From positions 310,001-374,000 of the IMG/VR virus record IMGVR_UViG_3300032288_004964: a stretch of DNA of 64,000 nucleotides; one strand, given 5' to 3'. Below the pieces are notes generated by a model. It searched no databases. It saw only the letters and a list, made by a program, of their open reading frames with translations, and had not been told where the DNA came from. Numbering within the stretch: the first letter of the stretch is position 1; every line of letters starts with the position of its first letter. Both the position numbers and the translations under genes were made by a program. Of the stretch, positions 19,986 to 60,219 are shown piece after piece.

Positions 19986-20579
19986 ATGAATATTGTTATA
20001 CTTGGGGGACCAGGGAGTGGAAAAGGAACTATCTGTGAAAAACTTGTAGAAGAGTTTAATTATAAAATGGTTTGTGCTGGTGACTTACTTAGAGAAGAAA
20101 AAGCATCTGGTTCAGAATTAGGAAAGCAAATTGCTAAATTGATTGATGCTGGTAACTTAGTTCCTGATAATGTTATAACTGACATTATCTATAATGAATT
20201 TAGGAAACCTATTAGACTTGGTAAATTCTTTTTAGTAGATGGTTACCCAAGAAGTATAAAACAAGCAATTAGTCTAAGTCAAATGATTAATGTTCAAATT
20301 GTTCTTTGGTTAGAAGTAAGTGATGAAACAACTATTAAAAGAAATTTGAATAGAGGTTTAACATCAGGTAGACCAGATGATGCAAATGAAGAAATCATTA
20401 AAAAGAGACTAGAAAATTATAAAGAAATGTCAGTTCCTATTAAAAGGTATTACAATGACTGTATTGTAGAGATTGATGGTGAGGGAACACCAGATGAAGT
20501 TTATCAAAGGATTATAGACACCTTGTTTGAAAATGTAAGAGAACCAAGAGATGTCACTGATATTTTAGATGAAGAGTAA
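19986..20579 (+). CDS. adk: Adenylate kinase
   Basis: GGPGSGKGT P-loop, GDLLREE, LVDGYPR, GRPDD. Confidence 0.93.
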   Translation: MNIVILGGPGSGKGTICEKLVEEFNYKMVCAGDLLREEKASGSELGKQIAKLIDAGNLVPDNVITDIIYNEFRKPIRLGKFFLVDGYPRSIKQAISLSQMINVQIVLWLEVSDETTIKRNLNRGLTSGRPDDANEEIIKKRLENYKEMSVPIKRYYNDCIVEIDGEGTPDEVYQRIIDTLFENVREPRDVTDILDEE

Positions 20580-20583
20580 AATG

Positions 20584-20609
20584 AAATCCAGATTTAATCT
20601 GGATTTTTT
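20584..20609 (+). terminator. Terminator after adk
   Basis: AAATCCAGAT-TTA-ATCTGGATTTTTT. Confidence 0.65.
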
Positions 20610-20622
20610 AATATATAAAGTA

Positions 20623-21963
20623 ATGAAACTATTTAGATATAAAGAATTTATAAAAGAAGGGTTAGAAGTTAAAAATTCAATTCCTACTTATGAACAAGCA
20701 TTAGAATTATGTTCTATTGAAGAATCTCCATTTTATGAATCAAAAATGGAAGTAGATGAATATAATGTATCTGTTTTTAATTATAGACTTGCTCAATACA
20801 AAGACTTTTCAAATCCTATTCCTGAAAAGCCAGAATTAAAAGGATTTGAAATGAGAGGTTTAACTTTTATATTTAATAAAGATGGTTCTTTATTTAAAAG
20901 ATATGTGTTGCTTGAAAAGTTTTTTAATTTAAATCAAGTACCAGACTCTTTATACTCTGTTGTTAAAAACTACAAAATTAAGTTTGTTAATAATAAAGAA
21001 GATGGTTCAATTGCTTCTTTTGTTAAACTACCAAATGGTAAAGTTGTTGGTAAATCCAAAATGGGATTTGATAATGACCAAGCTAATGGTATAAATAGAA
21101 TTTACAAAACTAATTCAGATATTAAAAAATTTGTTGATTGGGCTTTAGATAATGATATAGTCCCAGTATTCGAATATGTTGCTCCAAACAACCGTATTGT
21201 TCTAAGATATCCAGGTGAAGAATTAATCTTATTAAGATTAAGAGATAATAAAACAGGTAAGCATATTGATATTAGAGACCACTTGGATAAAGTTGGTAAT
21301 ATTAGAATTGCTCCTTTTGAAGATGAAATTAAAGATTTAGATACATTAATTGAATTAAACGCTACTCAAGTTGATAAAGAAGGTTCTATTGTTACTTGTG
21401 AAGATGAGAATGGTCATGACTTTTTCTTTAAGTTAAAAACACCTTGGTACTGTGAAAGACATGGTTTATTAACAAATGATATTTATAGAGAACATATTAT
21501 TATTAATTATATCTTAGATGATAAGATAGATGATATATTAGGTCAAATACCAGAAGAAGAAGTTGAGGCTCATCAAAGAATTAATAAGATTATTTCTATT
21601 GTCAAAAAAGCAATTTCTGACAAAGTGTCTGAAATTGAAAAATCTTATGATGATTTTATTAAATCAGGTATTTCTAAAAAAGATTATGCTATAAAAAATA
21701 GAGTTGGTAACACTAACTTTGGTTTTGTTATGAATATGGTTAAAGCAAATGATTTAAGAAAGATGTCTAAAGAAGAAATATTAGATATCTATGATAATAT
21801 GGAAGAATATGAAAAGGCATTACAAAGATGTCAACCATATGAAATGGCTAAAGAATGGATTAAAGATTTAACTAAGAGATTAAACCTTTCTAGAGAATGG
21901 CTAAAGAAAAAAGATCCAACTCTTTTCTTTCAAGAACCAGAAGAAAGTGATGATGATAATTAA
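20623..21963 (+). CDS. T4 Rnl1-type RNA ligase with N-terminal leader
   Basis: EMRGLTF, KFFNLNQ, KEDGS (adenylation Lys), FEYVAPNNRIV, EG.., KLKTPWY; start moved to MKLFRYKEFIKE after terminator and TAATATATA. Confidence 0.85.
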   Translation: MKLFRYKEFIKEGLEVKNSIPTYEQALELCSIEESPFYESKMEVDEYNVSVFNYRLAQYKDFSNPIPEKPELKGFEMRGLTFIFNKDGSLFKRYVLLEKFFNLNQVPDSLYSVVKNYKIKFVNNKEDGSIASFVKLPNGKVVGKSKMGFDNDQANGINRIYKTNSDIKKFVDWALDNDIVPVFEYVAPNNRIVLRYPGEELILLRLRDNKTGKHIDIRDHLDKVGNIRIAPFEDEIKDLDTLIELNATQVDKEGSIVTCEDENGHDFFFKLKTPWYCERHGLLTNDIYREHIIINYILDDKIDDILGQIPEEEVEAHQRINKIISIVKKAISDKVSEIEKSYDDFIKSGISKKDYAIKNRVGNTNFGFVMNMVKANDLRKMSKEEILDIYDNMEEYEKALQRCQPYEMAKEWIKDLTKRLNLSREWLKKKDPTLFFQEPEESDDDN

Positions 21964-39755: not shown

Positions 39756-41600
39756 TTATTTTAATAGTTCAGTTTTTCTTAGATCGGAGCTTTTACCAAA
39801 CCAAATATCAAGTGATTTATCTGATACTTCATCTTTGGTAATAAGAGTCATTCTTGGTGAGTTAATAATATCTTGATACTCATCATCAACAAGTGCTGCT
39901 AAACCTTTCTTATACTTAATATCAAATTGTTTCAAATCATTCTTTTCAACAAATTCATTATATTCAGTTTGAGTATAAAAAAGAACTTTCTTTTTAGTTT
40001 TTGATTTAGGAATAGCAACTACAATAGGAGTTTCAACTTTATAAATCATTCTTCTATCAAACATATCAGGCCAATACTTATGAAAGAAGTTTAATAATAA
40101 ACTAGCAATAGAGTTACCATCAACATCAGCATCAACATAGAAAAGTATTCTACCATATCTCAAATCTCTTAAATCTACTTTCTGTCCTAACTTTAAACCA
40201 ATAGCTGCCATTAAATTAACAACCTCTTCGTTTAAAACTAGTTTTTGATTAGTCATCTCAGACACATTTACAAATTTACCTTTAAGTGCAAAAGCACCCA
40301 TAGTTTCCGGTGTTCTATATTTTCTAAAAGCAGAGATAGCTGAATCACCTTCAAATAAACCAATAGAACATTTCCAACGGTCTTTACCTTTAGCATCAAT
40401 AAGTTTCTCAACTTTAATCTTACCAAGTTTTTTATTTAAATCTCTTTGGAGTTTTGAATCTTCAGCATTTTTCTTTTGTTGAATCCAATCTAATATTGAA
40501 TTAACAATCTCAGATTTTAAAATTGATTGAATTAACTTTGTTGGTACTTCAAATGTAGAACCAAAATCTTTAACCTCAGTAATTAACTTTTCTTTTGTTT
40601 GAGAAGAGAATGATGGATTAATTACAGTAGAATCTAAAAATAGAAACATATGATTTCTTAATTCACCTGGTTTAACATCTACCTTATGTTTTTTCTGAAA
40701 ATACTCTATTAAAGAAACTTGTATTTGTCTCATAACATATTCAACATGTGTTCCACCATCATAAGTATCAGTAGAGTTAGCAAATGAAACTTGTTGAAAT
40801 CCATTTTCAGAAAGTGCAATACCTACTGACCAAGTTTTATCTTTTTTAGATTCATAAAAGTAAGTAGGAGTATATAATTTAATATAATCTTCAAATGCTT
40901 TGAAGTTAATTAATTTACCATTAAAATAAACTTTAAGATTAGTATTACAGGCTGCAATATCATAAACTCTTTTTTCAAGCATTTTGAAATGATCATCATC
41001 TATTCCTTTAAGTTCAAATTTATCAAAATCTACTAAATAATTAATTTCTGTAAATCCTTTGCTACTTTTTTTAATTTTAGCAGGTGTTCTTTTTCTCATA
41101 TTATTAGAGAAAGTTTGTGTGTAATGATTTAAACCATCACAAGTAGTTACTGTAAACTCCTTTGAATATATGTTTGTAAGAGTAGAACCTACACCATTTG
41201 TACCAGCCCAAGATCTTTCTTCACTATCATCAAAGTTAGAACCTGCTTTAAGATTAGAAAAAATCATTTCGGGAATCCATTCTTTGTGTTGTGTGTGTTT
41301 TACAACAGGAATACCACCGTTATCCCAGATGTTTATATAATTTGTTTCCCTATTAATATCTACTTTAATAGTATTTAATTTAGATTCTTTTCTTTTACTT
41401 TCATCAACTGAGTTAGTAACAATCTCATCAAATATTTTTAATAAACCAGGATTATAGGTTACTTCTTTTTGAATCATCTTATCTTCTTCAATAATCCATT
41501 TATTTGCTTTGTGTGGCTTAATTGAGCCAATATACATACCAGGTCTTAATATAACATGGTCAATGTCATCTAACTTTTGAAACTTTTTATCTACTGACAT
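39756..41600 (-). CDS. Type II DNA topoisomerase, ATPase/TOPRIM subunit (T4 gp39+60-like)
   Basis: RPGMYIGS, EIVTNSVDE, GTNGVG, EGDSA, DADVDG, KKGL. Confidence 0.95.
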   Translation of the reverse strand: MSVDKKFQKLDDIDHVILRPGMYIGSIKPHKANKWIIEEDKMIQKEVTYNPGLLKIFDEIVTNSVDESKRKESKLNTIKVDINRETNYINIWDNGGIPVVKHTQHKEWIPEMIFSNLKAGSNFDDSEERSWAGTNGVGSTLTNIYSKEFTVTTCDGLNHYTQTFSNNMRKRTPAKIKKSSKGFTEINYLVDFDKFELKGIDDDHFKMLEKRVYDIAACNTNLKVYFNGKLINFKAFEDYIKLYTPTYFYESKKDKTWSVGIALSENGFQQVSFANSTDTYDGGTHVEYVMRQIQVSLIEYFQKKHKVDVKPGELRNHMFLFLDSTVINPSFSSQTKEKLITEVKDFGSTFEVPTKLIQSILKSEIVNSILDWIQQKKNAEDSKLQRDLNKKLGKIKVEKLIDAKGKDRWKCSIGLFEGDSAISAFRKYRTPETMGAFALKGKFVNVSEMTNQKLVLNEEVVNLMAAIGLKLGQKVDLRDLRYGRILFYVDADVDGNSIASLLLNFFHKYWPDMFDRRMIYKVETPIVVAIPKSKTKKKVLFYTQTEYNEFVEKNDLKQFDIKYKKGLAALVDDEYQDIINSPRMTLITKDEVSDKSLDIWFGKSSDLRKTELLK

Positions 41601-42397: not shown

Positions 42398-43741
42398 ATG
42401 GTAACAGAAAAAAGTATTACAGAATTCTTATCCAATGAGTACAAAGAATTTGCGATGTATTCAATTGAAGGCCGTGCTATTCCTTCGGTTATTGATGGTT
42501 TTAAACCAACTCAAAGAAAAATTATACACGGATCATCTCAGATTTGGAAAACAGGAAATGAAAAAACCTTAAAGATATTTCAACTATCTGGATATATTGC
42601 AGCAAATTGTTTTTATCATCACGGTGATGCGTCATTATCAAATGCCATTATTAATATGGCCCAGAGATTTAAGAACAATGCCCCTCTTTTAGAAGAAGAA
42701 GGTCAGTTTGGTTCTTTAAGATCACCACAAGCTGGTGCTCCTCGTTACATAGGTACTAAATTATCTGATAACTTTAGACTAATCTATAAAGACTTTGACC
42801 TATTAGATTATAAAGAAGAAGAAGGTGAGTCAATTGAACCTAAATACTTTTTACCTATTGTTCCAGCTGTTTTATTAAATGGTTCATCAGGTATTGCTGT
42901 AGGATTTGCCTCTAATGTTTTAAATAGAGATATTAAGTCTATTATAGATGCTTGTATTAAAGTTTTAGCTGGTAAAAATCCAGGTGAAGTTAAACCATCT
43001 TTAAATGAGTTTACTGGAGAATTTATACAAGATAAAGAAAATAACAAAAGATGGATTATTAGAGGTAGATTTGAAAGAGCTAATACAACAACTGTTAAAA
43101 TTAGTGAACTTCCTCCTTCAATGACTTATGAGAAGTATGAGGAAATATTAGATAAGTTAGCGGATGATAAACTAATTGTCTCTTATGATGATAATTGCAA
43201 AGATAATATTGATTATGTTATTAAATTCACCAGAGCAGATTTAGAGAAATTAGATGATGAAAAATTAGTTAAGTTATTGAAACTTGAAGAATCATCAACT
43301 GAGATTTTCTCAACACTAGATGAGAATGGTAAATTAAAAATATTTGAAAATACATCTGATATTATTAAATACTTTGTTGATTTTAGATTAACTTATTACC
43401 ATAAAAGAAAACAATTCCTCTTAGACAAAATGAATCGTGACCTTAAAATATTAGGTAACAGAGGTAGATTTATTAAAGCGATTCTTGATGGTAAGTTAAA
43501 AGTAAATAATGTTCCAAAGGTTCAAATTATTGAAGGAATTGAAGCAATGAGTTTAGATAAGATAGATGATTCTTATGACTATCTTTTAAGAATGCCTATC
43601 TACTCTTTAACAAAAGAAGTATTTGATAAATTAAAAGAAGATTTTTCAGCTAAGAAAGAAGAAATAAAAGCTTTAGAAGCAACTGATCCTAAAGATATGT
43701 ATGTTCAGGATTTAACTGAATTAAAAAAGAAATTTAAATGA
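42398..43741 (+). CDS. Type II DNA topoisomerase, breakage-reunion subunit (T4 gp52-like)
   Basis: RAIPSVIDGFKPTQRK, YHHGD, APRYI (catalytic Tyr), NGSSGIAVGF. Confidence 0.95.
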   Translation: MVTEKSITEFLSNEYKEFAMYSIEGRAIPSVIDGFKPTQRKIIHGSSQIWKTGNEKTLKIFQLSGYIAANCFYHHGDASLSNAIINMAQRFKNNAPLLEEEGQFGSLRSPQAGAPRYIGTKLSDNFRLIYKDFDLLDYKEEEGESIEPKYFLPIVPAVLLNGSSGIAVGFASNVLNRDIKSIIDACIKVLAGKNPGEVKPSLNEFTGEFIQDKENNKRWIIRGRFERANTTTVKISELPPSMTYEKYEEILDKLADDKLIVSYDDNCKDNIDYVIKFTRADLEKLDDEKLVKLLKLEESSTEIFSTLDENGKLKIFENTSDIIKYFVDFRLTYYHKRKQFLLDKMNRDLKILGNRGRFIKAILDGKLKVNNVPKVQIIEGIEAMSLDKIDDSYDYLLRMPIYSLTKEVFDKLKEDFSAKKEEIKALEATDPKDMYVQDLTELKKKFK

Positions 43742-44461: not shown

Positions 44462-45061
44462 ATGTTCCAATCATCAAAAACCGTTAAACAACTATTTTAT
44501 ATCAACTTTATAGTTTTCATTATTGGAATTCTATTACAATTAGTTGGTTTTCCATTCTATAAGGTATTTGCCTTGTATCCACCCGGCAGTCCAAACTTTG
44601 AAATATATCAGTTTATAACTTATATGTTTTTACACTCTGGTATATTACACATAGTTTTTAATATGTTAGCACTGGCTTCTTTTGGTCATATAACTGAGGA
44701 TTATTTTGGTAGAAACAAATTCATTTTATTTTATTTAACAACTGGTATAGGTGCAACCTTATTACATCTTTTAATGACTAATAGTCAATTACCAATGGTT
44801 GGTGCGTCTGGTGCTATTTATGGTATATTAGTAGTATCAGCTTTAATAAGTCCAAATGAGAAAGTAAGTATATTTCCAATTCCTATTGGAATTAAGTTAA
44901 AGTATTTAATATCTTCTTTATTTGTGATGGAAATACTTTTAGGGTTTCTATCAACAGGTGATGGTGTTGGGCACTTTGCACATGTAGGCGGTGGATTAAC
45001 AGGTATTTTATTTTATTTAATTAGCAGAAAATTTTCACCAAAAAAGAAAAGATGGTCATGA
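44462..45061 (+). CDS. Rhomboid intramembrane serine protease
   Basis: TYMFLH, HIVFNM, GASGA, AHVGG; multiple TM helices. Confidence 0.93.
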   Translation: MFQSSKTVKQLFYINFIVFIIGILLQLVGFPFYKVFALYPPGSPNFEIYQFITYMFLHSGILHIVFNMLALASFGHITEDYFGRNKFILFYLTTGIGATLLHLLMTNSQLPMVGASGAIYGILVVSALISPNEKVSIFPIPIGIKLKYLISSLFVMEILLGFLSTGDGVGHFAHVGGGLTGILFYLISRKFSPKKKRWS

Positions 45062-45636
45062 AAAAATTATTAATATTAGATATGGATGAAACTCTATTAC
45101 ACACAGAGACTTCCAGAGAGATTGATTACTTACCTGAAGGATCATATGATTTTAAGTTTCCTTTAGGAGGAGGTGGTTGGTCAAATGATGAACATTGGTA
45201 CTTCACACTTAAAAGACCTTTTTTAGATGAATTTATGAAATATGCCTTTGATAACTTTAAGGTTGCTATCTGGACAGCAGGTGGATCCGATTATGCTTCA
45301 GAAGCTATTTCAAGAGCTGGAATTGATAAAAGTAAATTAGAATTCTTTTGGACTCGTGAAAGATGTACTATGAAATATGATTTTGAAACAGGATTTAGTT
45401 ATGGTGTTAAGAATTTAGAAAAAGTTCATAAATCACTTGGATGGGATTTGAATAATGTCTTAATTGTTGATGATGTTCAAAAAACAGCAATTAATAATTA
45501 TGGTAACTTAATTCATATTAAAGAGTTCTACAATGATAGAAATGATATTGAGTTAAAAAAACTAATGAACTATTTAGATAGAATTAAAGATTCTCCTAAT
45601 TTTAGGAGTATTGAAAAAAGAGGTTGGTCTAATTAA
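45052..45636 (+). CDS. FCP1/NIF-type HAD phosphatase
   Basis: LILDMDETLLH, KRPFLDEF, WTAG...YA, IVDD. Confidence 0.85.
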   Translation: MVMKKLLILDMDETLLHTETSREIDYLPEGSYDFKFPLGGGGWSNDEHWYFTLKRPFLDEFMKYAFDNFKVAIWTAGGSDYASEAISRAGIDKSKLEFFWTRERCTMKYDFETGFSYGVKNLEKVHKSLGWDLNNVLIVDDVQKTAINNYGNLIHIKEFYNDRNDIELKKLMNYLDRIKDSPNFRSIEKRGWSN

Positions 45637-45751
45637 AAATATATCTAAAATTTTTAGATATATTTTTTTTACATTTTTGATTATTATATATACTATGTAA
45701 TCTCAATCCAGAGTATATAGGGTTAGAGACAAAAAAATCATAATTAAAATT

Positions 45752-47440
45752 ATGAAAAATTTATGTCTTTTATTATTATTTATAATTATTTCACCTAAAA
45801 TTGGTAAATCTCAAATGTGTAATACCACTCCAACAAATATGGGTGGTTTAACACTAACGGGCACTTGGCAAAATGCCGCTGCCGCTTCCGGTGCTAAAAG
45901 ATACTGGACATTTAATGCGACTGCTGGATGTACCTATGACTTTAGTTCTTGTAATAGTATAAATACAAATGATACTTATTTAAGATTATACTCTGGTACA
46001 AATCCACTGACTGCTGTTTTACAAACTTCTAATGATGATAATGGTCCTTGGTGTACTGGTACAAAAGCTTCTATTTCTTGGGTTTGTCCAACAACTGGTG
46101 CTTATTCTATATTATTGACAAATTATTCTTGTGCTAACATATCTTCAAACTCTATTTTAAGTTATAGACAAATATGCGCACCTCCTTATAATCCATGTTT
46201 AACAATACCATCAATTAATTGTGGTGTTTTAACTAATTTATCTGTATCATCTGGTAATGGTATATACAATCCGCCATCAACTACTTGTGGTTTCTCAACA
46301 CCTGGTAAAGAATATATCTACTCATTTACACCAACTGTAACTGGTAACTATCAAATATCACAACCTACAAGTTTTGGATATATTGATTACTTTTATAAGT
46401 TAGCATCTGGTGGTTGTAATGGTACTGGTTGGACTTGTATAGATGATATCTCAAATGCCAATGTTGGTAATGCTAATGTAAATATTGCTTTAACATCTGG
46501 TGTTACATATTATATCTTATTAGATCCAGAATCTACCGCTGGTGGATCAGTTTCTTTTAGTATAACTTGTCCAGCTCCTGTAATACCCCCTGCTAATAAT
46601 GACTGTTCTGGTGCTATATCTATAGCATCCTTACCTTATAGTAGTGGTATTGTTTCAAATAATAATGCAACAGATGATGTGCCAACTTCAACATCTGGTT
46701 GTAGTACACAAGGATCAAATGTTTGGTATACTGTAGTTGGTAATGGTAATAACTTAACAGATACAACTTGTAACGCTTCTACTAATTTTGATACTGAGGT
46801 AAGAGTTTATACTGGAAATTGTTCGTCATTAAATAGTATGGTTGAAGTTACTTGTAATGATGATTATTCATCTTGTGCTAGTAGTGGTCTGCAATCAAGT
46901 GTTAGTTGGTGTTCTCAAGTAGGTATAACTTATTATATTTCGGTTGGGTATTTTGCGTCTGGTGTTGGTTATGGTAATTATGTTTTGAGTGTAACAGATG
47001 GTGTTTCTTGCTCACCATTACCAATAGAATTAATTAGTTTTACTGGAAATTTAACAGAAGATAATAGTGTTTTATTAAAATGGACAACTGAAACAGAAAG
47101 AAATAATAATTACTTTCTTGTTGAAAAATCATTAGATGCTGTTAATTGGTCTAATGTATCAAGAGTACAAGCTGCTGGAAATTCACTGTATAGAATAGAT
47201 TATTCAACTATTGATAATAGTCCTACTATTGGAGTTAATTATTATAAATTAACACAAGTTGATTATGATGGTCAAAGAGAATCTTTTAATATCATAGCGG
47301 TAGAGCTAGTAATAGATATGGAAAAATGTTCAGATACATTTTATGATTTAATGGGTAGAGTAATAGATATTACAATTGCATCACCTGGTGTTTATTTACA
47401 AAAGTGTAATGGTGGGTATAAAAAGATAATTAAAAGATAA
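45752..47440 (+). CDS. Secreted Cys-rich Bacteroidota-type surface protein, probable T9SS substrate
   Basis: Signal peptide; PANNDC..A repeats; PLPIELISFTG...YYKLTQVDYDG Ig-like domain; short CTD-like end YDLMGR...GVY. Confidence 0.75.
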   Translation: MKNLCLLLLFIIISPKIGKSQMCNTTPTNMGGLTLTGTWQNAAAASGAKRYWTFNATAGCTYDFSSCNSINTNDTYLRLYSGTNPLTAVLQTSNDDNGPWCTGTKASISWVCPTTGAYSILLTNYSCANISSNSILSYRQICAPPYNPCLTIPSINCGVLTNLSVSSGNGIYNPPSTTCGFSTPGKEYIYSFTPTVTGNYQISQPTSFGYIDYFYKLASGGCNGTGWTCIDDISNANVGNANVNIALTSGVTYYILLDPESTAGGSVSFSITCPAPVIPPANNDCSGAISIASLPYSSGIVSNNNATDDVPTSTSGCSTQGSNVWYTVVGNGNNLTDTTCNASTNFDTEVRVYTGNCSSLNSMVEVTCNDDYSSCASSGLQSSVSWCSQVGITYYISVGYFASGVGYGNYVLSVTDGVSCSPLPIELISFTGNLTEDNSVLLKWTTETERNNNYFLVEKSLDAVNWSNVSRVQAAGNSLYRIDYSTIDNSPTIGVNYYKLTQVDYDGQRESFNIIAVELVIDMEKCSDTFYDLMGRVIDITIASPGVYLQKCNGGYKKIIKR

Positions 47441-47567
47441 TAATTAAAACAAAAATAAATATTAAAAATATACAAATTATATTATATTAATTTTTCTAGA
47501 TTTAAGATATTATGAGGTATCGAATTTCAATCTATATGATATAATTATATTAAATTAAACCCAAATT

Positions 47568-50264
47568 ATGAAAAAATTGCTTTTAATAGCAACATTCTTG
47601 ATTACAAGCCTGTTGTCTTATTCTCAAGCACCTGCTAATGATAATTGTAGCGGTGCTCAAAGTCTCGGAACACTTCCAACACCAGCCGCCTGTCCAAGTG
47701 GTATTGGTTCATCGGTCAATGTTTCAGGTACAAATATTAATGCGACAGGACCATTGCCATATACAACATTATTAGGATGTCAGACTGGTGGTAATCAGCC
47801 TGGTCCAGCTTTAGATGTATGGTACTCTTTTGTTGCATCAGGTAATCAAGTTAATATAAATATAACACCTGGTTCTGCTCCATTTTTAGCAAGTCCGGCT
47901 ATTACACTTTGGACAGGATCTTGTGGGGCTTTAGTAGGATTTAACTGTGATAATAATGGAACTTTAACTGGTAATAATTCAGTTACATTTCAACCCATGA
48001 CACCTGGTCAAACATATTACATACAAATAAGTGGTATGAATGCTACTAATCAGGGAAATTTCAACTTATCTGTGAATTCTTCTAATGATTGTAATAATTG
48101 TTTACAAGTTGCTAATCTAACAGTTAGTCCTGCTCCCACAAATGGAACTTACCCACCAAATACAACAGTTAATTTTTGCTATAATATTTCTTCTTTTACT
48201 CAAGTAAGTTCCAATTGGTTACATGGAGTAATACCTACTTTTGGGTGTGGGTGGAATTTATCTACACTTACTACAACACCTGCCGCATCTTGTTCTGGTA
48301 GTGGAACTTGGAGTTGGTATCCATCTTGGACCAGTTCAGCAAATGGTTCTACTTGGGGACCTGGATTTGCTTATGATTATAATACATCTCCTGGCAATCC
48401 TGGTAATAACTTTGGTGATAACTGTTCAACTCCTAATTGGAACTTTTGTTGGTCTATTAAAACAAAAGCTGTTTGTAGTCCAACTTGTACAAACTTAAAT
48501 ATTAATATCAATACAACCGGTGATGGTGAGTCTGGATCTTGGACATCAGTAGCTTGTCTAGGTGATCCAAACTATCAATTTGCAGCAGTTATGTCTTGTT
48601 GTAGTTCAACTGCATCCAGTACAAATCCAACTTGTTTTGGTGGTTCTAATGGTTCAGCAACTGCTATTCCTGGTTCAACCGGTGTTCCTCCATTTACATA
48701 TTCTTGGAATACAGTTCCCACACAGACTACACAAACTGCTACTAATTTAAGTGCTGGGGCATATACCTGCACAGTTACTGATTTTAATGGATGTACTTCT
48801 ACTTGTAATGTTACTATTTCAAATCCTCCTCAAATTTTAGTACCAGTAACACAATCAAATGTAACTTGTTTCGGCGGTTCTAATGGATCAGCAACTGCTA
48901 ACCCATCTGGTGGAGTTGGTCCTTATACTTATTCTTGGAATACAGTTCCTACACAAACTACACAAACTGCTACTAATCTAATACCTGGTACATATACTGT
49001 AACTGTGGCAAGCTCAAATGGTTGTATAAAAACAAACACAGTTAGTATTACTCAACCAACGGCAATAGTTGTAACTACTTCAACTACCAGTGCTTCTTGT
49101 GGTAATTCAAATGGTTCAGCAACTGCTAACCCATCTGGTGTTGGTCCTTATACCTATTCTTGGAACACAACACCAGTTCAAACTACACAAACGGCAACAA
49201 ATATACCATTTGGTAGTTATACTGTTACTGTTACAAATAGTAGTGGATGTACTGGGACAACAACTGCTAATGTACCATCAACTGGTAGTGTAAGTGCTAC
49301 TTCAACATCAACACCAACAAGTTGTTTTGGTAGTTCAGATGGTTCTGCCACTGCTAATGGATTTGGAGGTACTTTATATACATATCTTTGGAATACAACA
49401 CCACCTCAAACAAGTCAAACAATTACTGGATTACCAGCGGGCGTTTATACTTGTACTATATCAAGTGCTGCTTGTAATGCAACAACAACTATTATAGTTA
49501 CCGAACCACCTATTATAAATGTAACATACTCAACTACTCCATTATCTGGGTGTGTACCATTAGCAGTAACATATAATAATACAACTCCAGGTATATCAAA
49601 TTGTAGTTGGAATATAAATGGTGTGATTACTAATAGTTGTAATGTTACTCAAGTATTTACATCAGGTGGAACATATAACTCAACACTAACTGTAACTGAT
49701 GCTAATGGTTGTTCAAATTCAACAGGTCCAATAGTTGCTAATGCTTACCCTATTCCATTTGCTTCTTTTTCTCCAAATCCATCAGTAACTAATTTATTAT
49801 CACCAACTATTACATTTGATAATATGAGTTCGGGTGGTAGTTATTTTTGGAATTTTGGTGATGGTAACACATCAAGTAGTCTAAATCCTACAAACACATA
49901 TGCTGATACAGGAACATATGTGATTAATCTAACAGTAACTAGTCAATATGGTTGTTCTGATTCAACCTATTCTACAATACATATAACTGATATTCTCTCT
50001 GTTTATATACCTAATGCTTTTACACCTAATGGTGATGGTAAGAATGATTCATTTTTACCAATTATTTTAGGATTTGATAAATATGAATATTGGATATTTG
50101 ACCGTTGGGGTGAAATGATATTCAATACAAATTCTGGTAGATCTTGGGATGGAACTTATAAAGGTAAATTAGTTCAACAAGATGTTTATATTTGTAAGTT
50201 AGTAGTTTATGATTTAAATAAGAAAAAGTATGAATATACTAATCACATTTCTTTAATTAGATAA
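47568..50264 (+). CDS. Secreted adhesin-like protein with SprB repeats, PKD domains and gliding-motility-associated (type B T9SS) CTD
   Basis: Signal peptide; repeated TCFGGSNGSATA..PYTYSW; WNFGDG; YIPNAFTPNGDGKND...IFDRWG...WDG. Confidence 0.9.
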   Translation: MKKLLLIATFLITSLLSYSQAPANDNCSGAQSLGTLPTPAACPSGIGSSVNVSGTNINATGPLPYTTLLGCQTGGNQPGPALDVWYSFVASGNQVNINITPGSAPFLASPAITLWTGSCGALVGFNCDNNGTLTGNNSVTFQPMTPGQTYYIQISGMNATNQGNFNLSVNSSNDCNNCLQVANLTVSPAPTNGTYPPNTTVNFCYNISSFTQVSSNWLHGVIPTFGCGWNLSTLTTTPAASCSGSGTWSWYPSWTSSANGSTWGPGFAYDYNTSPGNPGNNFGDNCSTPNWNFCWSIKTKAVCSPTCTNLNININTTGDGESGSWTSVACLGDPNYQFAAVMSCCSSTASSTNPTCFGGSNGSATAIPGSTGVPPFTYSWNTVPTQTTQTATNLSAGAYTCTVTDFNGCTSTCNVTISNPPQILVPVTQSNVTCFGGSNGSATANPSGGVGPYTYSWNTVPTQTTQTATNLIPGTYTVTVASSNGCIKTNTVSITQPTAIVVTTSTTSASCGNSNGSATANPSGVGPYTYSWNTTPVQTTQTATNIPFGSYTVTVTNSSGCTGTTTANVPSTGSVSATSTSTPTSCFGSSDGSATANGFGGTLYTYLWNTTPPQTSQTITGLPAGVYTCTISSAACNATTTIIVTEPPIINVTYSTTPLSGCVPLAVTYNNTTPGISNCSWNINGVITNSCNVTQVFTSGGTYNSTLTVTDANGCSNSTGPIVANAYPIPFASFSPNPSVTNLLSPTITFDNMSSGGSYFWNFGDGNTSSSLNPTNTYADTGTYVINLTVTSQYGCSDSTYSTIHITDILSVYIPNAFTPNGDGKNDSFLPIILGFDKYEYWIFDRWGEMIFNTNSGRSWDGTYKGKLVQQDVYICKLVVYDLNKKKYEYTNHISLIR

Positions 50265-50283
50265 TTTTTCTTATATTTGTAAA

Positions 50284-50652
50284 ATGAGAAAAGAGAGTAT
50301 TATTGAAATGATTGATAAAAGAATTGTAGATTCTTATGTTCAAGGTATTGCAACATCTTCTATTATAGAAGATATGAGTACTCGTATTAGAAATATGTCT
50401 ACCGTTGTTAAAATGGAAGGACTTGATTTATCAACTCTTCTTCAAAAAGAATTTGAAGAATTAGATAATGAGGATATTAAAGTAAGAGCAAAATATAGTG
50501 TATTTTATATTAAACACTCTACTCAAAGAATTAAAGATTTAAATTGGTTGGATTCTAAAAAGAAATCTTTTTTTGGATACTCAAATTCACAAATATTTAA
50601 GTTAATAAAACTAAAGGAAAAACTTTTAGTGAAACATAGTATGCCGTTTTAA
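50284..50652 (+). CDS. Hypothetical protein
   Basis: ATG 4 nt after TATATTTG. Confidence 0.55.
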   Translation: MRKESIIEMIDKRIVDSYVQGIATSSIIEDMSTRIRNMSTVVKMEGLDLSTLLQKEFEELDNEDIKVRAKYSVFYIKHSTQRIKDLNWLDSKKKSFFGYSNSQIFKLIKLKEKLLVKHSMPF

Positions 50653-50685
50653 TAAACAAAGTTTCATTTTTTTCATAAAATAAAA

Positions 50686-51252
50686 ATGAAATTCTATTTA
50701 AACAAACCTATTATTTCCGAACAGGAAAAACTATCTTGGGAAAAAGGTGATTTACCTAAAATGACATTATCTCAATATGAAATAATGGAAGGTAGTCTTG
50801 ATGATATTGAACAACATATTATCAACTTTATAAAAAAATCATTTTCTGATATAAAGGAAGCTTTAGAAATAAATGAGTTTGAAGAAGCTTCTATAATAAT
50901 GCCAGCTTTACAAATGTGTTCAGTTGATGAAATAGATGTTATTGATATGAATATAGAAATAACAAATACAGAAGAAGATAGCTTACAATGGGCTCTAAAG
51001 AATTTATCAAATGGTTTAACTGATGAATTAGAAGAAGTTGAAGAAGATGAAGAAGTTGAAGAAGATATAGATGATGTGGGTGAAGTTATAATAGATGATA
51101 CTGAGCAAGAAGAAACAGAAGAATCAGTAGAAGAAGATGCTGTTGAGCATATCTATGAAGAAACTGAGAACCCAACAGATGATGAGATATCTGAAATGGA
51201 AATGGATATAATCAGAAAGAGTCTTTTAGGAGATGAAGATAAAACCATGTAA
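50686..51252 (+). CDS. Highly acidic hypothetical protein
   Basis: D/E-rich C-terminal half. Confidence 0.55.
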   Translation: MKFYLNKPIISEQEKLSWEKGDLPKMTLSQYEIMEGSLDDIEQHIINFIKKSFSDIKEALEINEFEEASIIMPALQMCSVDEIDVIDMNIEITNTEEDSLQWALKNLSNGLTDELEEVEEDEEVEEDIDDVGEVIIDDTEQEETEESVEEDAVEHIYEETENPTDDEISEMEMDIIRKSLLGDEDKTM

Positions 51253-60131: not shown

Positions 60132-60203
60132 GCAGGTATAGCTCAGTGGTAGAGCAGGATTCTCTAAAAGTCTTTGTCGTGGGTTCGATCCCCGCTACCC
60201 GCA
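60132..60203 (+). tRNA. tRNA with CUA anticodon (amber suppressor)
   Basis: Acceptor GCAGGTA/TACCCGC (one A-C mismatch), D arm GCTC/GAGC, anticodon stem GGATT/AGTCT with loop CT-CTA-AA, T arm GTGGG-TTCGATC-CCCGC; CCA not encoded. Confidence 0.88.
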
Positions 60204-60219
60204 CTAAAATAAAACAAAC

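What the first reader, a model, noticed from the sequence alone, without database searches (positions are those of the whole stretch)
45752..50264. Phage-encoded type IX secretion cargo (SprB-repeat adhesin and partner)
Seen: two adjacent long, signal-peptide-bearing, Thr/Ser/Cys-rich genes; one has SprB repeats, PKD domains and a clear type B T9SS CTD. Established: such proteins are exported to the Bacteroidota surface by T9SS. Inference: the phage remodels the infected cell surface (adhesion, aggregation, receptor masking, gliding or grazing avoidance). This is unusual for a presumably lytic phage and also pins the host phylum.
Basis: partly seen in the sequence, partly recalled or inferred. 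Interest (0 to 1): 0.62.

Follow-up and report, generated by a model that had tools for sequence, protein, structure and literature searches.

The report
Huge-phage genes for host surface export
A 385-kb freshwater phage of Bacteroidota carries a real, conserved gene for an adhesin-like protein with a complete type IX secretion tag, so the infected cell probably displays a phage protein on its surface; the neighbouring gene is not its dedicated partner, and the idea itself has one published precedent.

Summary
Window 45752-47440 (562 aa) and 47568-50264 (898 aa) are intact genes with signal peptides and Ser/Thr/Cys-rich products.

**The 898-aa protein.** It has 4 SprB repeats, 2 PKD domains and a type B T9SS C-terminal domain (CTD) above curated cut-offs.

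**Genuine phage DNA.**
- The window lies in a 385-kb T4-like virus record.
- An independent metagenome contig spans the whole stretch.
- Third-position GC (GC3) matches the phage.
- Orthologues sit in the same gene order in a curated circular 642-kb huge phage.

**Secretion machinery.** The phage has a third type B cargo gene but no PorP/SprF shuttle, so it must use the host's.

**The 562-aa protein is not a dedicated partner.**
- It is absent from the syntenic loci of relatives.
- It matches no CTD model.
- Its bacterial homologues carry full type A CTDs. All phage-borne homologues examined carry a roughly 46-aa remnant tail.

**Verdict.** It is probably T9SS cargo that remodels the infected cell surface. 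The exact role is untested. Phage T9SS cargo has been published once, for type A CTDs (Bellas 2020). At least 510 type B CTD stretches occur in IMG/VR contigs. I rate this a new variant of a known kind, of moderate interest.

The parts
47568..50264 (+). Gene for the 898-aa SprB-repeat / PKD / type B CTD protein (P0002), the main phage-encoded T9SS cargo
   Evidence: ORF; translation; Pfam and NCBIfam matches over curated cut-offs; orthologues in syntenic position in LR756502.1 and IMG/VR contigs
47568..47624 (+). Signal peptide of P0002 (residues 1-19). Cleavage is predicted to expose Gln20, following the Bacteroidetes Q-rule.
   Evidence: Sequence read directly; N-terminal helix 2-17 in the model; Gln20 nearly invariant in 29 homologues; rule from PMC5837995
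47628..48602 (+). N-terminal head of P0002: a PPC/collagen-binding-like beta-sandwich (residues 21-175) followed by a Cys-rich beta-sandwich (residues 176-345). No enzyme fold.
   Evidence: AlphaFold2 pLDDT 76. Foldseek: ColG collagen-binding domain TM 0.57-0.59, S. gordonii adhesin Sgo0707 head TM 0.36. 32% identical to P0001 residues 280-420.
48603..49532 (+). Four SprB repeats of about 78 aa each, forming the stalk
   Evidence: Pfam SprB 4 stretches, 96.1 bits; boundaries set by the repeat period. Orthologues have more repeats and reach 1280-1670 aa.
49533..49997 (+). Two PKD domains
   Evidence: Pfam PKD_4, 2 stretches, 64.5 bits; PKD 30 bits
50007..50261 (+). Type B T9SS C-terminal sorting domain (residues 814-898)
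   Evidence: TIGR04131 48.6 bits against cut-off 35; CHU_C 41.5 bits against cut-off 27. All invariant columns of an 18-sequence CTD alignment are kept.
45752..47440 (+). Gene for the 562-aa secreted beta-sandwich array (P0001): signal peptide, three PPC/CUB-like modules, an fn3-like domain and a short C-terminal tail
   Evidence: ORF; translation; 259 or more homologues. AlphaFold2 pLDDT 84.6, all-beta. Foldseek finds CUB, discoidin, ColG and fn3 arrays.
47300..47437 (+). Short tail of P0001 (residues 517-562). It is a remnant of roughly the second half of a type A CTD and ends in KKIIKR.
   Evidence: Alignment with full-CTD homologues. hhalign probability 65.6%, E 5.8e-5, against positions 31-71 of the full CTD region. 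Only 4 strands in the model. No match to PF18962 or TIGR04183.
50284..50652 (+). 122-aa ORF with no signal peptide. It follows the SprB-type gene in this phage and in its relatives. Function unknown.
   Evidence: 43-46% identical ORF directly after the orthologue in L003 and L005. No Pfam or PHROG match.
44462..45636 (+). Rhomboid protease gene (44462-45061) and NIF/FCP1-like phosphatase gene (45052-45636). These are the conserved upstream neighbours that anchor the synteny.
   Evidence: Pfam Rhomboid 108 bits, NIF 118.7 bits. 55-64% identical, in the same order, in LR756502.1 and IMGVR_UViG_3300015608_001567.

Best explanation
The 898-aa gene is a resident gene of a clade of huge T4-like Bacteroidota phages.

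**Proposed pathway (inferred)**
1. During infection its product is exported by the host Sec system. Signal peptidase I cuts after residue 19 and exposes Gln20.
2. The host type IX secretion system recognises the complete type B C-terminal domain and carries the protein across the outer membrane.
3. The phage has no PorP/SprF-type shuttle, so a host PorP/SprF-like protein takes up the cargo and holds it on the cell surface.
4. There it forms a stalk of 4 SprB repeats and 2 PKD domains. The stalk carries a non-enzymatic head of a PPC-like and a Cys-rich beta-sandwich.

**Likely consequence (inferred, least certain)**
The surface of the infected cell is remodelled. The phage protein may occupy host shuttles or adhesin sites, or cover T9SS-dependent surface structures. 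Either would hinder adsorption of other phages, or of progeny, to infected cells. It could also change how the cell adheres.

**The 562-aa neighbour**
It is a separately acquired secreted binding-type protein. Its family's bacterial members are type A T9SS cargo. Its own tail is a remnant, so its route beyond the periplasm is open.

**Shown versus inferred**
- Shown: gene integrity, domains, phage residence, conservation, purifying selection, and absence of a phage shuttle gene.
- Inferred: export, surface display and biological effect.
For: **Domains and CTD**
- Domain matches exceed curated cut-offs.
- All invariant CTD columns are kept.

**Export signals**
- Signal peptide with a Q-rule junction.

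**Phage residence**
- 385-kb virus record, with T4-type topoisomerase II and RNA ligase and gp23.
- A 7,556-b contig from a freshwater metagenome of another study spans 44900-50700 with 8 differences. Small contigs from groundwater and plankton samples bridge each gene junction.
- GC3 is 0.115 and 0.123, against 0.164 +/- 0.032 for the phage. The local GC rise lies entirely in second codon positions.

**Conservation**
- Orthologues at 57-72% identity occur in six IMG/VR contigs, with a seventh, weaker repeat-only match (45% over residues 341-646).
- The gene order topoisomerase II / rhomboid / NIF phosphatase / SprB-type gene / 122-aa ORF recurs in LR756502.1 and one IMG/VR contig.
- LR756502.1 is 642,428 bp. 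That size matches one of the four complete, manually curated circular genomes (634-735 kb) of Al-Shayeb 2020. The identification is mine, by size. It holds 3 type B CTDs over the cut-off.
- Strain differences in the gene are 21 synonymous and 8 non-synonymous codons.

**More cargo, no shuttle**
- A third type B cargo gene is in this genome.
- No PorP/SprF family gene is in this phage, in LR756502.1 or in a third phage record. A Flavobacterium control has 5.

**Literature**
- Type B CTDs need PorP/SprF shuttles, and orphan cargo can share one shuttle (PMC12618676, PMC9143113).
- Flavobacterium escapes phages through mutations in gliding and T9SS genes, so T9SS-dependent surface parts matter for adsorption (titles and abstracts only).
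- Precedent for phage T9SS cargo: PMC7468147.
Against: - There are no expression data. No RNA run holds the stretch.
- The host is unknown, so no cognate shuttle can be named.
- Type B CTD recognition is shuttle-specific, so an orphan phage CTD might not be accepted by the host.
- The head has no identifiable ligand. The fold matches are generic beta-sandwiches with low whole-model TM-scores.
- The receptor-masking role rests only on analogy.
- No dedicated signal-peptide predictor was run.
Confidence: 0.7

Rival explanations
1. Both proteins are virion parts: capsid decoration like T4 Hoc, or fibre-tip adhesins. Their Ig-like, PKD and PPC modules would bind host or environmental glycans from the phage particle, not from the cell surface.
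For: - Beta-sandwich arrays of this kind are common in tail and decoration proteins. Foldseek against viral models returns many tail, fibre and capsid-decoration proteins.
- One PHROG 'virion structural protein' family matches a SprB repeat weakly.
- In another phage lineage the P0001 homologue lies just downstream of the gp23 capsid gene.
Against: - Both proteins have cleavable Sec signal peptides with the Q-rule junction, whereas virions assemble in the cytoplasm.
- P0002 ends in a complete type B sorting domain.
- In this phage the genes sit among replication and early-type genes such as topoisomerase II, not in the structural module.
- In the gp23-adjacent row, the neighbouring genes carry full type A sorting domains and include a subtilase.
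Confidence: 0.07
2. The cargo mainly serves adhesion or nutrient capture, acting as an auxiliary gene. It would make infected cells stick to particles, polymers or other cells to sustain the long infection of a huge phage. Blocking other phages would not be its role.
For: - The head resembles collagen-binding and adhesin heads.
- SprB repeats and PKD domains are typical of Bacteroidota surface adhesins (source names).
- A related phage lineage carries a T9SS-tagged subtilase. The published Cryophage carries T9SS-tagged glycoside hydrolases. Both fit an extracellular nutrient role.
Against: - Neither window protein has a catalytic domain.
- No ligand is known.
- Nothing here separates this role from receptor masking, and the two are not exclusive.
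Confidence: 0.15
3. The genes are recently captured host DNA carried as passengers without function for the phage, or host sequence joined to the phage by mis-assembly.
For: - GC rises to 0.32-0.36 over 46-50 kb, against 0.26-0.29 around it.
- The closest named relatives of both proteins are bacterial T9SS proteins.
Against: - The GC rise is all in second codon positions, and GC3 is phage-like.
- Independent contigs from three other studies cross every junction.
- Orthologues lie in conserved synteny in a complete circular 642-kb phage genome.
- The nearest relatives (57-89% identical) all lie in phage-like contexts where those were examined. Bacterial homologues are at most about 47% identical.
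- Changes between strains are mostly synonymous.
Confidence: 0.03

Closest known systems
T9SS cargo genes of 'Cryophage' (Bellas et al. 2020, Nat Commun, PMC7468147)
   Same: A phage genome encodes proteins with T9SS sorting domains. They are presumed to use the host machinery to change what the infected Bacteroidota cell secretes or displays. The authors also suggested superinfection or competition roles.
   Different: - Cryophage cargo carry type A domains on enzymes and a PA14 protein. Type A routing goes through the PorV shuttle, with covalent A-LPS anchoring.
- Here the cargo carries a type B domain on a non-enzymatic SprB/PKD adhesin-like protein. That implies a PorP/SprF-type shuttle and non-covalent anchoring.
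- Here the gene is conserved in synteny across a clade of huge phages, rather than lying in a variable island.
SprB gliding-motility adhesin of Flavobacterium johnsoniae and its shuttle SprF
   Same: SprB repeats, and a type B C-terminal domain with the same conserved blocks. SprB is bound by the PorP-like SprF.
   Different: - From my own knowledge, SprB is several thousand residues long and is encoded with sprC, sprD and sprF.
- The phage protein is 898 aa with 4 repeats.
- It has a different head and no shuttle gene next to it or anywhere in the phage.
- It is a SprB-repeat protein, not a SprB orthologue.
Orphan type B substrates of F. johnsoniae (Fjoh_1123, Fjoh_1720, Fjoh_4934) that share the shuttle Fjoh_1677 (PMC12618676)
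   Same: Type B cargo genes that are not linked to a shuttle gene and depend on a shuttle encoded elsewhere. This is the best model for how the phage cargo could be handled.
   Different: Those cargo and their shuttle lie in one bacterial genome. Here the cargo is in a virus and the shuttle would be the host's.
Bacterial type A T9SS cargo homologous to the 562-aa protein (for example P0049, P0023, and Crocinitomicaceae and Saprospiraceae MAG proteins)
   Same: The same modules: three PPC/CUB-like sandwiches and an fn3-like domain, 37-52% identical over most of the length.
   Different: - Bacterial members end in a full PF18962 domain, 98-114 aa after the fn3-like motif.
- The window protein ends 66 aa after that motif, and all phage-borne members examined end 60-70 aa after it. 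None matches a CTD model.

Membership tests
T9SS type B cargo (TIGR04131 / Pfam CHU_C), for the 898-aa protein | C-terminal type B sorting domain scoring above the curated cut-offs | tested here: met
   TIGR04131 48.6 bits against cut-off 35, model positions 3-85 of 85. CHU_C 41.5 bits against cut-off 27.
T9SS type B cargo (TIGR04131 / Pfam CHU_C), for the 898-aa protein | Conserved sequence blocks of the last ~100 residues. Five motifs were shown to be necessary for SprB CTD secretion (PMC12618676). | tested here: met
   All invariant and nearly invariant columns of an 18-sequence CTD alignment are kept: the PN.F.PN..G.ND block, the RWG block, the W of WDG and the VY block. Mapping these blocks onto the paper's motifs A-E is my inference, because the paper's text does not spell the motifs out.
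T9SS type B cargo (TIGR04131 / Pfam CHU_C), for the 898-aa protein | N-terminal Sec signal peptide | tested here: met
   MKK, then a hydrophobic stretch, then SYS|Q. Helix 2-17 in the model. Gln20 is nearly invariant in homologues. No dedicated predictor was available.
T9SS type B cargo (TIGR04131 / Pfam CHU_C), for the 898-aa protein | A PorP/SprF-like shuttle available to it, often encoded next to the cargo gene | tested here: not met
   No TIGR03519 match in this phage, LR756502.1 or the L023 record. There are 5 matches in a Flavobacterium stagni control. Linkage is usual but not obligatory, because orphan cargo exist. The host's shuttles could not be examined.
T9SS type B cargo (TIGR04131 / Pfam CHU_C), for the 898-aa protein | Secretion that depends on the T9SS | not testable with these tools
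   This needs expression in wild-type and T9SS-mutant cells.
SprB gliding adhesin orthologue | SprB repeats | tested here: met
   Pfam SprB, 4 stretches, 96.1 bits.
SprB gliding adhesin orthologue | Very long repeat protein encoded with the sprC, sprD and sprF genes | tested here: not met
   The protein is 898 aa, and the neighbouring genes are a rhomboid, a NIF phosphatase, P0001 and a 122-aa ORF. There is no SprF family gene. The size and operon of F. johnsoniae SprB are from my own knowledge.
T9SS type A cargo (PF18962 / TIGR04183), for the 562-aa protein | C-terminal type A sorting domain recognised by the family models | tested here: not met
   No match at default thresholds. No match for residues 415-562 at E up to 10. 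No match in genome scans with TIGR04183 or with PF18962 at E up to 1.
T9SS type A cargo (PF18962 / TIGR04183), for the 562-aa protein | Seven-stranded 3+4 beta-sandwich CTD, whose architecture is reported as essential (PMC11285876) | tested here: not met
   The tail is about 46 residues with 4 predicted strands. It aligns with positions 31-71 of the 85-residue CTD region of full-length homologues, with a 12-residue gap.
T9SS type A cargo (PF18962 / TIGR04183), for the 562-aa protein | Homology of the passenger part to proven or annotated type A cargo | tested here: met
   37-52% identity to proteins that carry PF18962. Genome hits are titled T9SS type A sorting domain proteins.
Phage-encoded T9SS cargo (as in Cryophage, PMC7468147) | A gene with a T9SS sorting domain that lies inside a bona fide phage genome | tested here: met
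   for this phage. for the complete circular relative.

The most novel reading that the evidence does not exclude
The ~46-residue tail on the 562-aa protein is a phage-adapted signal, not a decayed one. In every context examined it occurs only on phage-borne members of the family. It would be a minimal derivative of the type A sorting domain that keeps the last strands and the K-x-x-K end. It could engage the host T9SS or the PorV shuttle without being processed like normal cargo. That might give a new export route. Alternatively it might act as a decoy that jams secretion of host surface proteins, including phage receptors.
Probability: 0.12. Interest if true: 0.8.

Novelty: new variant of a known kind. 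Interest (0 to 1): 0.55.

Why it matters
T9SS-dependent surface proteins matter for phage adsorption: Flavobacterium escapes phages through mutations in gliding and T9SS genes. The system also builds the gliding adhesins and secreted enzymes of Bacteroidota, but that part is my own knowledge and was not tested here.

If huge phages routinely load their own type B cargo onto the host machinery, infected cells have a virus-designed surface. That would affect superinfection, aggregation and particle attachment.

The finding also gives practical tools:
- A type B CTD, together with the Q-rule junction, is a cheap host-phylum marker for uncultured phages.
- The contrast between short and full tails offers a natural experiment on the minimal requirements of a T9SS signal.

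The literature searches here found only one paper on phage T9SS cargo. IMG/VR nevertheless holds at least 510 type B CTD stretches, so the phenomenon looks under-described rather than rare.

Tried and rejected
- **Single-sequence viral scan.** A scan of viral contigs with the 562-aa protein alone found nothing. The same scan with an alignment found 15 loci.
- **Type A CTD models.** TIGR04183 and PF18962 found nothing in the whole phage.
- **PorP/SprF scan.** The first scan was uninformative because no control genome matched. It was repeated with a Flavobacterium control.
- **Small secreted ORF of relatives.** It has no homologue in this genome.
- **Stop-codon recoding.** An amber-suppressor tRNA lies in the window, so I tested for recoding. 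Open-frame coverage is the same under code 11, TAG read-through and TGA read-through. Only code 11 was used.
- **Promoters.** I read the two upstream intergenic regions by eye for the Bacteroidota TTTG ... TAnnTTTG promoter and saw no match. No statistical scan was done.
- **Literature.** Searches for T9SS with 'huge phage', with 'jumbo phage', and for SprB with phage auxiliary genes gave nothing relevant.
- **Fold searches.** They returned only generic beta-sandwich arrays. No ligand or enzyme assignment was possible.
- **Complex prediction.** Not run. I do not claim that the two proteins bind each other, the pair exceeds the size limit, and the host shuttle is unknown.
- **Large representative-protein search.** Not used, because the word search and family scans settled the identities.
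- **Tree.** The tree is the quick version. The careful search did not finish.

Full report
**1. The observation**

The finding's coordinates match two intact ORFs on the + strand: 45752-47440 (562 aa, P0001) and 47568-50264 (898 aa, P0002).

- Each has its own AT-rich upstream spacer, of 115 and 127 bp.
- Both start with a typical Sec signal: Lys, a hydrophobic run, then S|Q.
- Both are rich in Ser, Thr, Asn, Gly and Cys.
- P0002 matches Pfam SprB (4 stretches, 96.1 bits), PKD_4 (2 stretches), CHU_C (residues 814-891, 41.5 bits, cut-off 27) and NCBIfam TIGR04131, the type B sorting domain (48.6 bits, cut-off 35).
- P0001 matches no family. Cut into pieces and scanned at E up to 10, it gives only sub-threshold PPC and galactose-binding-like hints, and nothing at all for residues 415-562.

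**2. It is phage DNA, not a chimera**

- The window is bases 310001-374000 of a 385,333-bp virus record that CheckV rates 95% complete.
- T4-type topoisomerase II large and medium subunits lie at 39756-41600 and 42398-43741, and an RNA ligase lies at 20569-21963.
- A gp23-like capsid gene and 37 tRNA genes are elsewhere in the genome.
- The stretch 44900-50700 is present in runs from 11 studies.
- One 7,556-b contig from a freshwater metagenome of a different study covers all of it with 8 differences. Short contigs from a groundwater and a plankton sample cross each of the three gene junctions.
- GC rises over these genes, but only at second codon positions (0.49 and 0.57). GC3 is 0.115 and 0.123, inside the phage's own range of 0.164 +/- 0.032.
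- Between strains, 29 changed codons in the head region are 21 synonymous and 8 non-synonymous.

**3. Relatives of the SprB-type gene**

- Among 50,697 GenBank phage records, only two hold relatives: LR756502.1 (642 kb) and LR745206.1 (635 kb). By their sizes I take these to be two of the largest complete genomes of Al-Shayeb et al. 2020. [quoted passage not shown]
- Six IMG/VR contigs carry orthologues at 57-72% identity, and a seventh carries a weaker, repeat-only match.
- LR756502.1 and one IMG/VR contig keep the gene order topoisomerase II large / 237-aa ORF / topoisomerase II medium / 121-aa ORF / rhomboid / NIF phosphatase / SprB-type gene / 122-aa ORF.
- The orthologues are longer (1280-1670 aa) because they have more repeats.
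- LR756502.1 has three type B CTD matches over the cut-off.
- The present phage has a second type B CTD gene outside the window, G000:216908-221551 (-). It encodes 1547 aa with a signal peptide, a Q junction, PKD and CHU_C. It is the third candidate cargo gene, counting P0001 and P0002.
Of the 80 kept, 24 lie on contigs over 100 kb. Some IMG/VR records may include host flanks, so this figure shows frequency rather than a clean count.

**4. The 562-aa gene is not a fixed partner**

- In all eight relatives examined (seven IMG/VR or metagenome loci plus LR756502.1), the place just before the SprB-type gene holds a different gene. It is a 119-135-aa ORF with a signal peptide. That ORF has no homologue in this phage.
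- P0001 homologues are numerous, at 259 or more. They occur in 15 IMG/VR contigs in other contexts.
- In one T4-like lineage the P0001 homologue ends a row of five signal-peptide genes right after the gp23 capsid gene. The row is: subtilase + SprB + type A CTD; SprB + type A CTD; SprB only; a 318-aa short-tail protein; then the P0001 homologue.
- P0001 residues 280-420 are 32% identical to the first domain of P0002. The two proteins share a module, but no linkage.

**5. Structure**

- P0001 (pLDDT 84.6) is all-beta. It has three PPC/CUB-like sandwiches, an fn3-like domain and a 4-strand tail.
- The best solved matches for P0001 are CUB, discoidin, collagen-binding and fn3 arrays. The best viral matches are 'CUB domain' and 'Fn3-like' proteins of uncultured phages.
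- The head of P0002 (residues 1-350, pLDDT 76) is two beta-sandwiches. The first matches the ColG collagen-binding (PPC) domain at TM 0.57-0.59.
- No catalytic fold appears in either protein.

**6. The short tail**

- In a full-length alignment, P0001 and its close homologues end with about 46 residues. These align with the end of the type A CTD of longer homologues and lack about 40 residues of it.
- I measured the distance from the conserved fn3-like motif to the C-terminus:
  - 96 metagenomic homologues and 14 IMG/VR homologues have 60-70 residues.
  - 12 metagenomic homologues and 11 homologues from species-representative bacterial genomes have 98-114 residues.
- Every short-tail member whose context I examined is in a phage-like context: this window, the 14 IMG/VR loci, P0080 and P0062. 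Every full-tail member examined is bacterial: P0049, P0023 and 11 genome loci.
- A profile comparison aligns the short tail with positions 31-71 of the 85-residue full region, with a 12-residue gap (probability 65.6%, E 5.8e-5).
- On a quick tree of the protein bodies with tails removed, the short/full label needs 3 changes, against 18.9 when shuffled (0 of 500 shuffles as low). This shows clustering only. Related rows share labels, the careful search did not finish, and no direction of transfer is claimed.
- The type A CTD is reported to need its whole 7-strand sandwich (PMC11285876), and no model recognises the tail. I therefore do not file P0001 as T9SS cargo.

**7. Host**

- Both window proteins, the third cargo and several other phage signal-peptide proteins expose Gln after the predicted cleavage site. 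This is a Bacteroidetes-specific rule (PMC5837995).
- The scan of 185,579 species genomes confirmed 220 stretches encoding P0001 relatives. Among the 79 best loci kept, every titled record but one is Bacteroidota, mostly Flavobacterium, Chitinophagales, Saprospiraceae and Crocinitomicaceae. Many of the MAGs come from freshwater samples. The exception is a MAG labelled Nostocoides.
- The runs that hold the phage are freshwater, groundwater and plankton metagenomes.
- The phylum is well supported. No family can be named.

**8. Mechanism**

Established work shows three things about type B cargo.
- It crosses the outer membrane through the T9SS.
- It needs a PorP/SprF-like shuttle, and SprB stays bound to SprF.
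- Orphan cargo can share one shuttle (PMC12618676, PMC9143113).

The phage has three candidate cargo genes and no shuttle gene, so it must use a host shuttle. That step and everything after it are inference.

The link to superinfection rests on reports that Flavobacterium becomes phage-resistant through mutations in gliding and T9SS genes (titles and abstracts only). It also rests on the same suggestion made for Cryophage.

**9. Novelty**

- Phage T9SS cargo was described once, for three type A cargo genes of one phage. The authors called it a unique occurrence.
- Al-Shayeb et al. mention only that huge phages encode membrane or surface proteins that may affect susceptibility to other phages.
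- I found no paper on type B or SprB-repeat cargo in phages.
- New points here:
  - the type B class and what it implies for shuttle use;
  - conservation in synteny within a huge-phage clade;
  - multiple cargo genes per genome;
  - a short-tail form seen only on phage-borne members of a type A cargo family.

The result is a solid, moderately interesting extension of a known idea, not a new kind of system.

Noticed in passing
window 60132-60204 (+): A tRNA with anticodon CTA (an amber suppressor, which ARAGORN labels tRNA-Pyl) stands alone, far from the phage's main tRNA cluster. The genome has 37 tRNA genes. Open-frame coverage is the same under code 11, TAG read-through and TGA read-through, and 28 of 281 long ORFs end in TAG. 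I see no sign of recoding.
   Followed up: partly
window 44462-45061 and 45052-45636 (+): A rhomboid intramembrane protease gene and a NIF/FCP1-like phosphatase gene overlap by 10 bases. They are conserved in this order directly upstream of the SprB-type gene in LR756502.1 and an IMG/VR contig. A phage rhomboid next to secreted cargo could be functionally linked, but this was not tested.
   Followed up: partly
G000:C1:216908-221551 (-), outside the window (L027:409-5052:-): A third large secreted protein of the phage: 1547 aa, with a signal peptide, a Gln junction, a PKD domain and a type B CTD (CHU_C 53.3 bits; TIGR04131 62 bits).
   Followed up: partly
G000:C1:194554-195246 (+) and 257593-259056 (-), outside the window: Two further phage proteins with signal peptides and Q-rule junctions. 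One is a non-specific DNA/RNA endonuclease (Endonuclease_NS, 108.7 bits). The other is a 487-aa protein with a histidine-kinase-type ATPase domain.
   Followed up: no
L003:7667-8035, L005:5614-5973, L010:620-997, L004:9560-9967: In relatives, a conserved 119-135-aa ORF with a signal peptide sits immediately before the SprB-type gene. It ends in ...LIALYNHIEK or similar. It has no Pfam or PHROG match and is absent from this phage. It is a better candidate for a true partner than the 562-aa protein.
   Followed up: partly
L023:3021-9938 (IMGVR_UViG_3300042691_055965, 229 kb): Directly after the gp23 capsid gene lies a row of five signal-peptide genes. It includes a subtilase with SprB repeats and a full type A CTD, and a 275-aa SprB protein with a type A CTD. 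IMG/VR classes this record as a provirus.
   Followed up: partly
contexts of P0049 and P0023 (no DNA held): Both bacterial full-CTD homologues of the 562-aa protein lie close to an HNOBA-HisKA hybrid sensor kinase and a LytTR response regulator. They come from two different samples. This hints at a regulated locus in the bacteria.
   Followed up: no
window 47692-48816: In the plankton sample, contigs differ from the window by 5.5-8.5% across the head of the SprB-type protein. On most flanking pieces the difference is 0-2%. The listed changes are mostly synonymous (21 of 29 codons).
   Followed up: partly
G000:C1:1-100, outside the window: The virus record begins inside a run of GGT-NNN-NNN codons, a Gly-X-Y collagen-like repeat. 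This probably explains why the assembly stops there and is classed as linear.
   Followed up: no
window 50284-50652 (+): A 122-aa ORF with no signal peptide and no family match follows the SprB-type gene here. At 43-46% identity it does the same in two relatives.
   Followed up: partly
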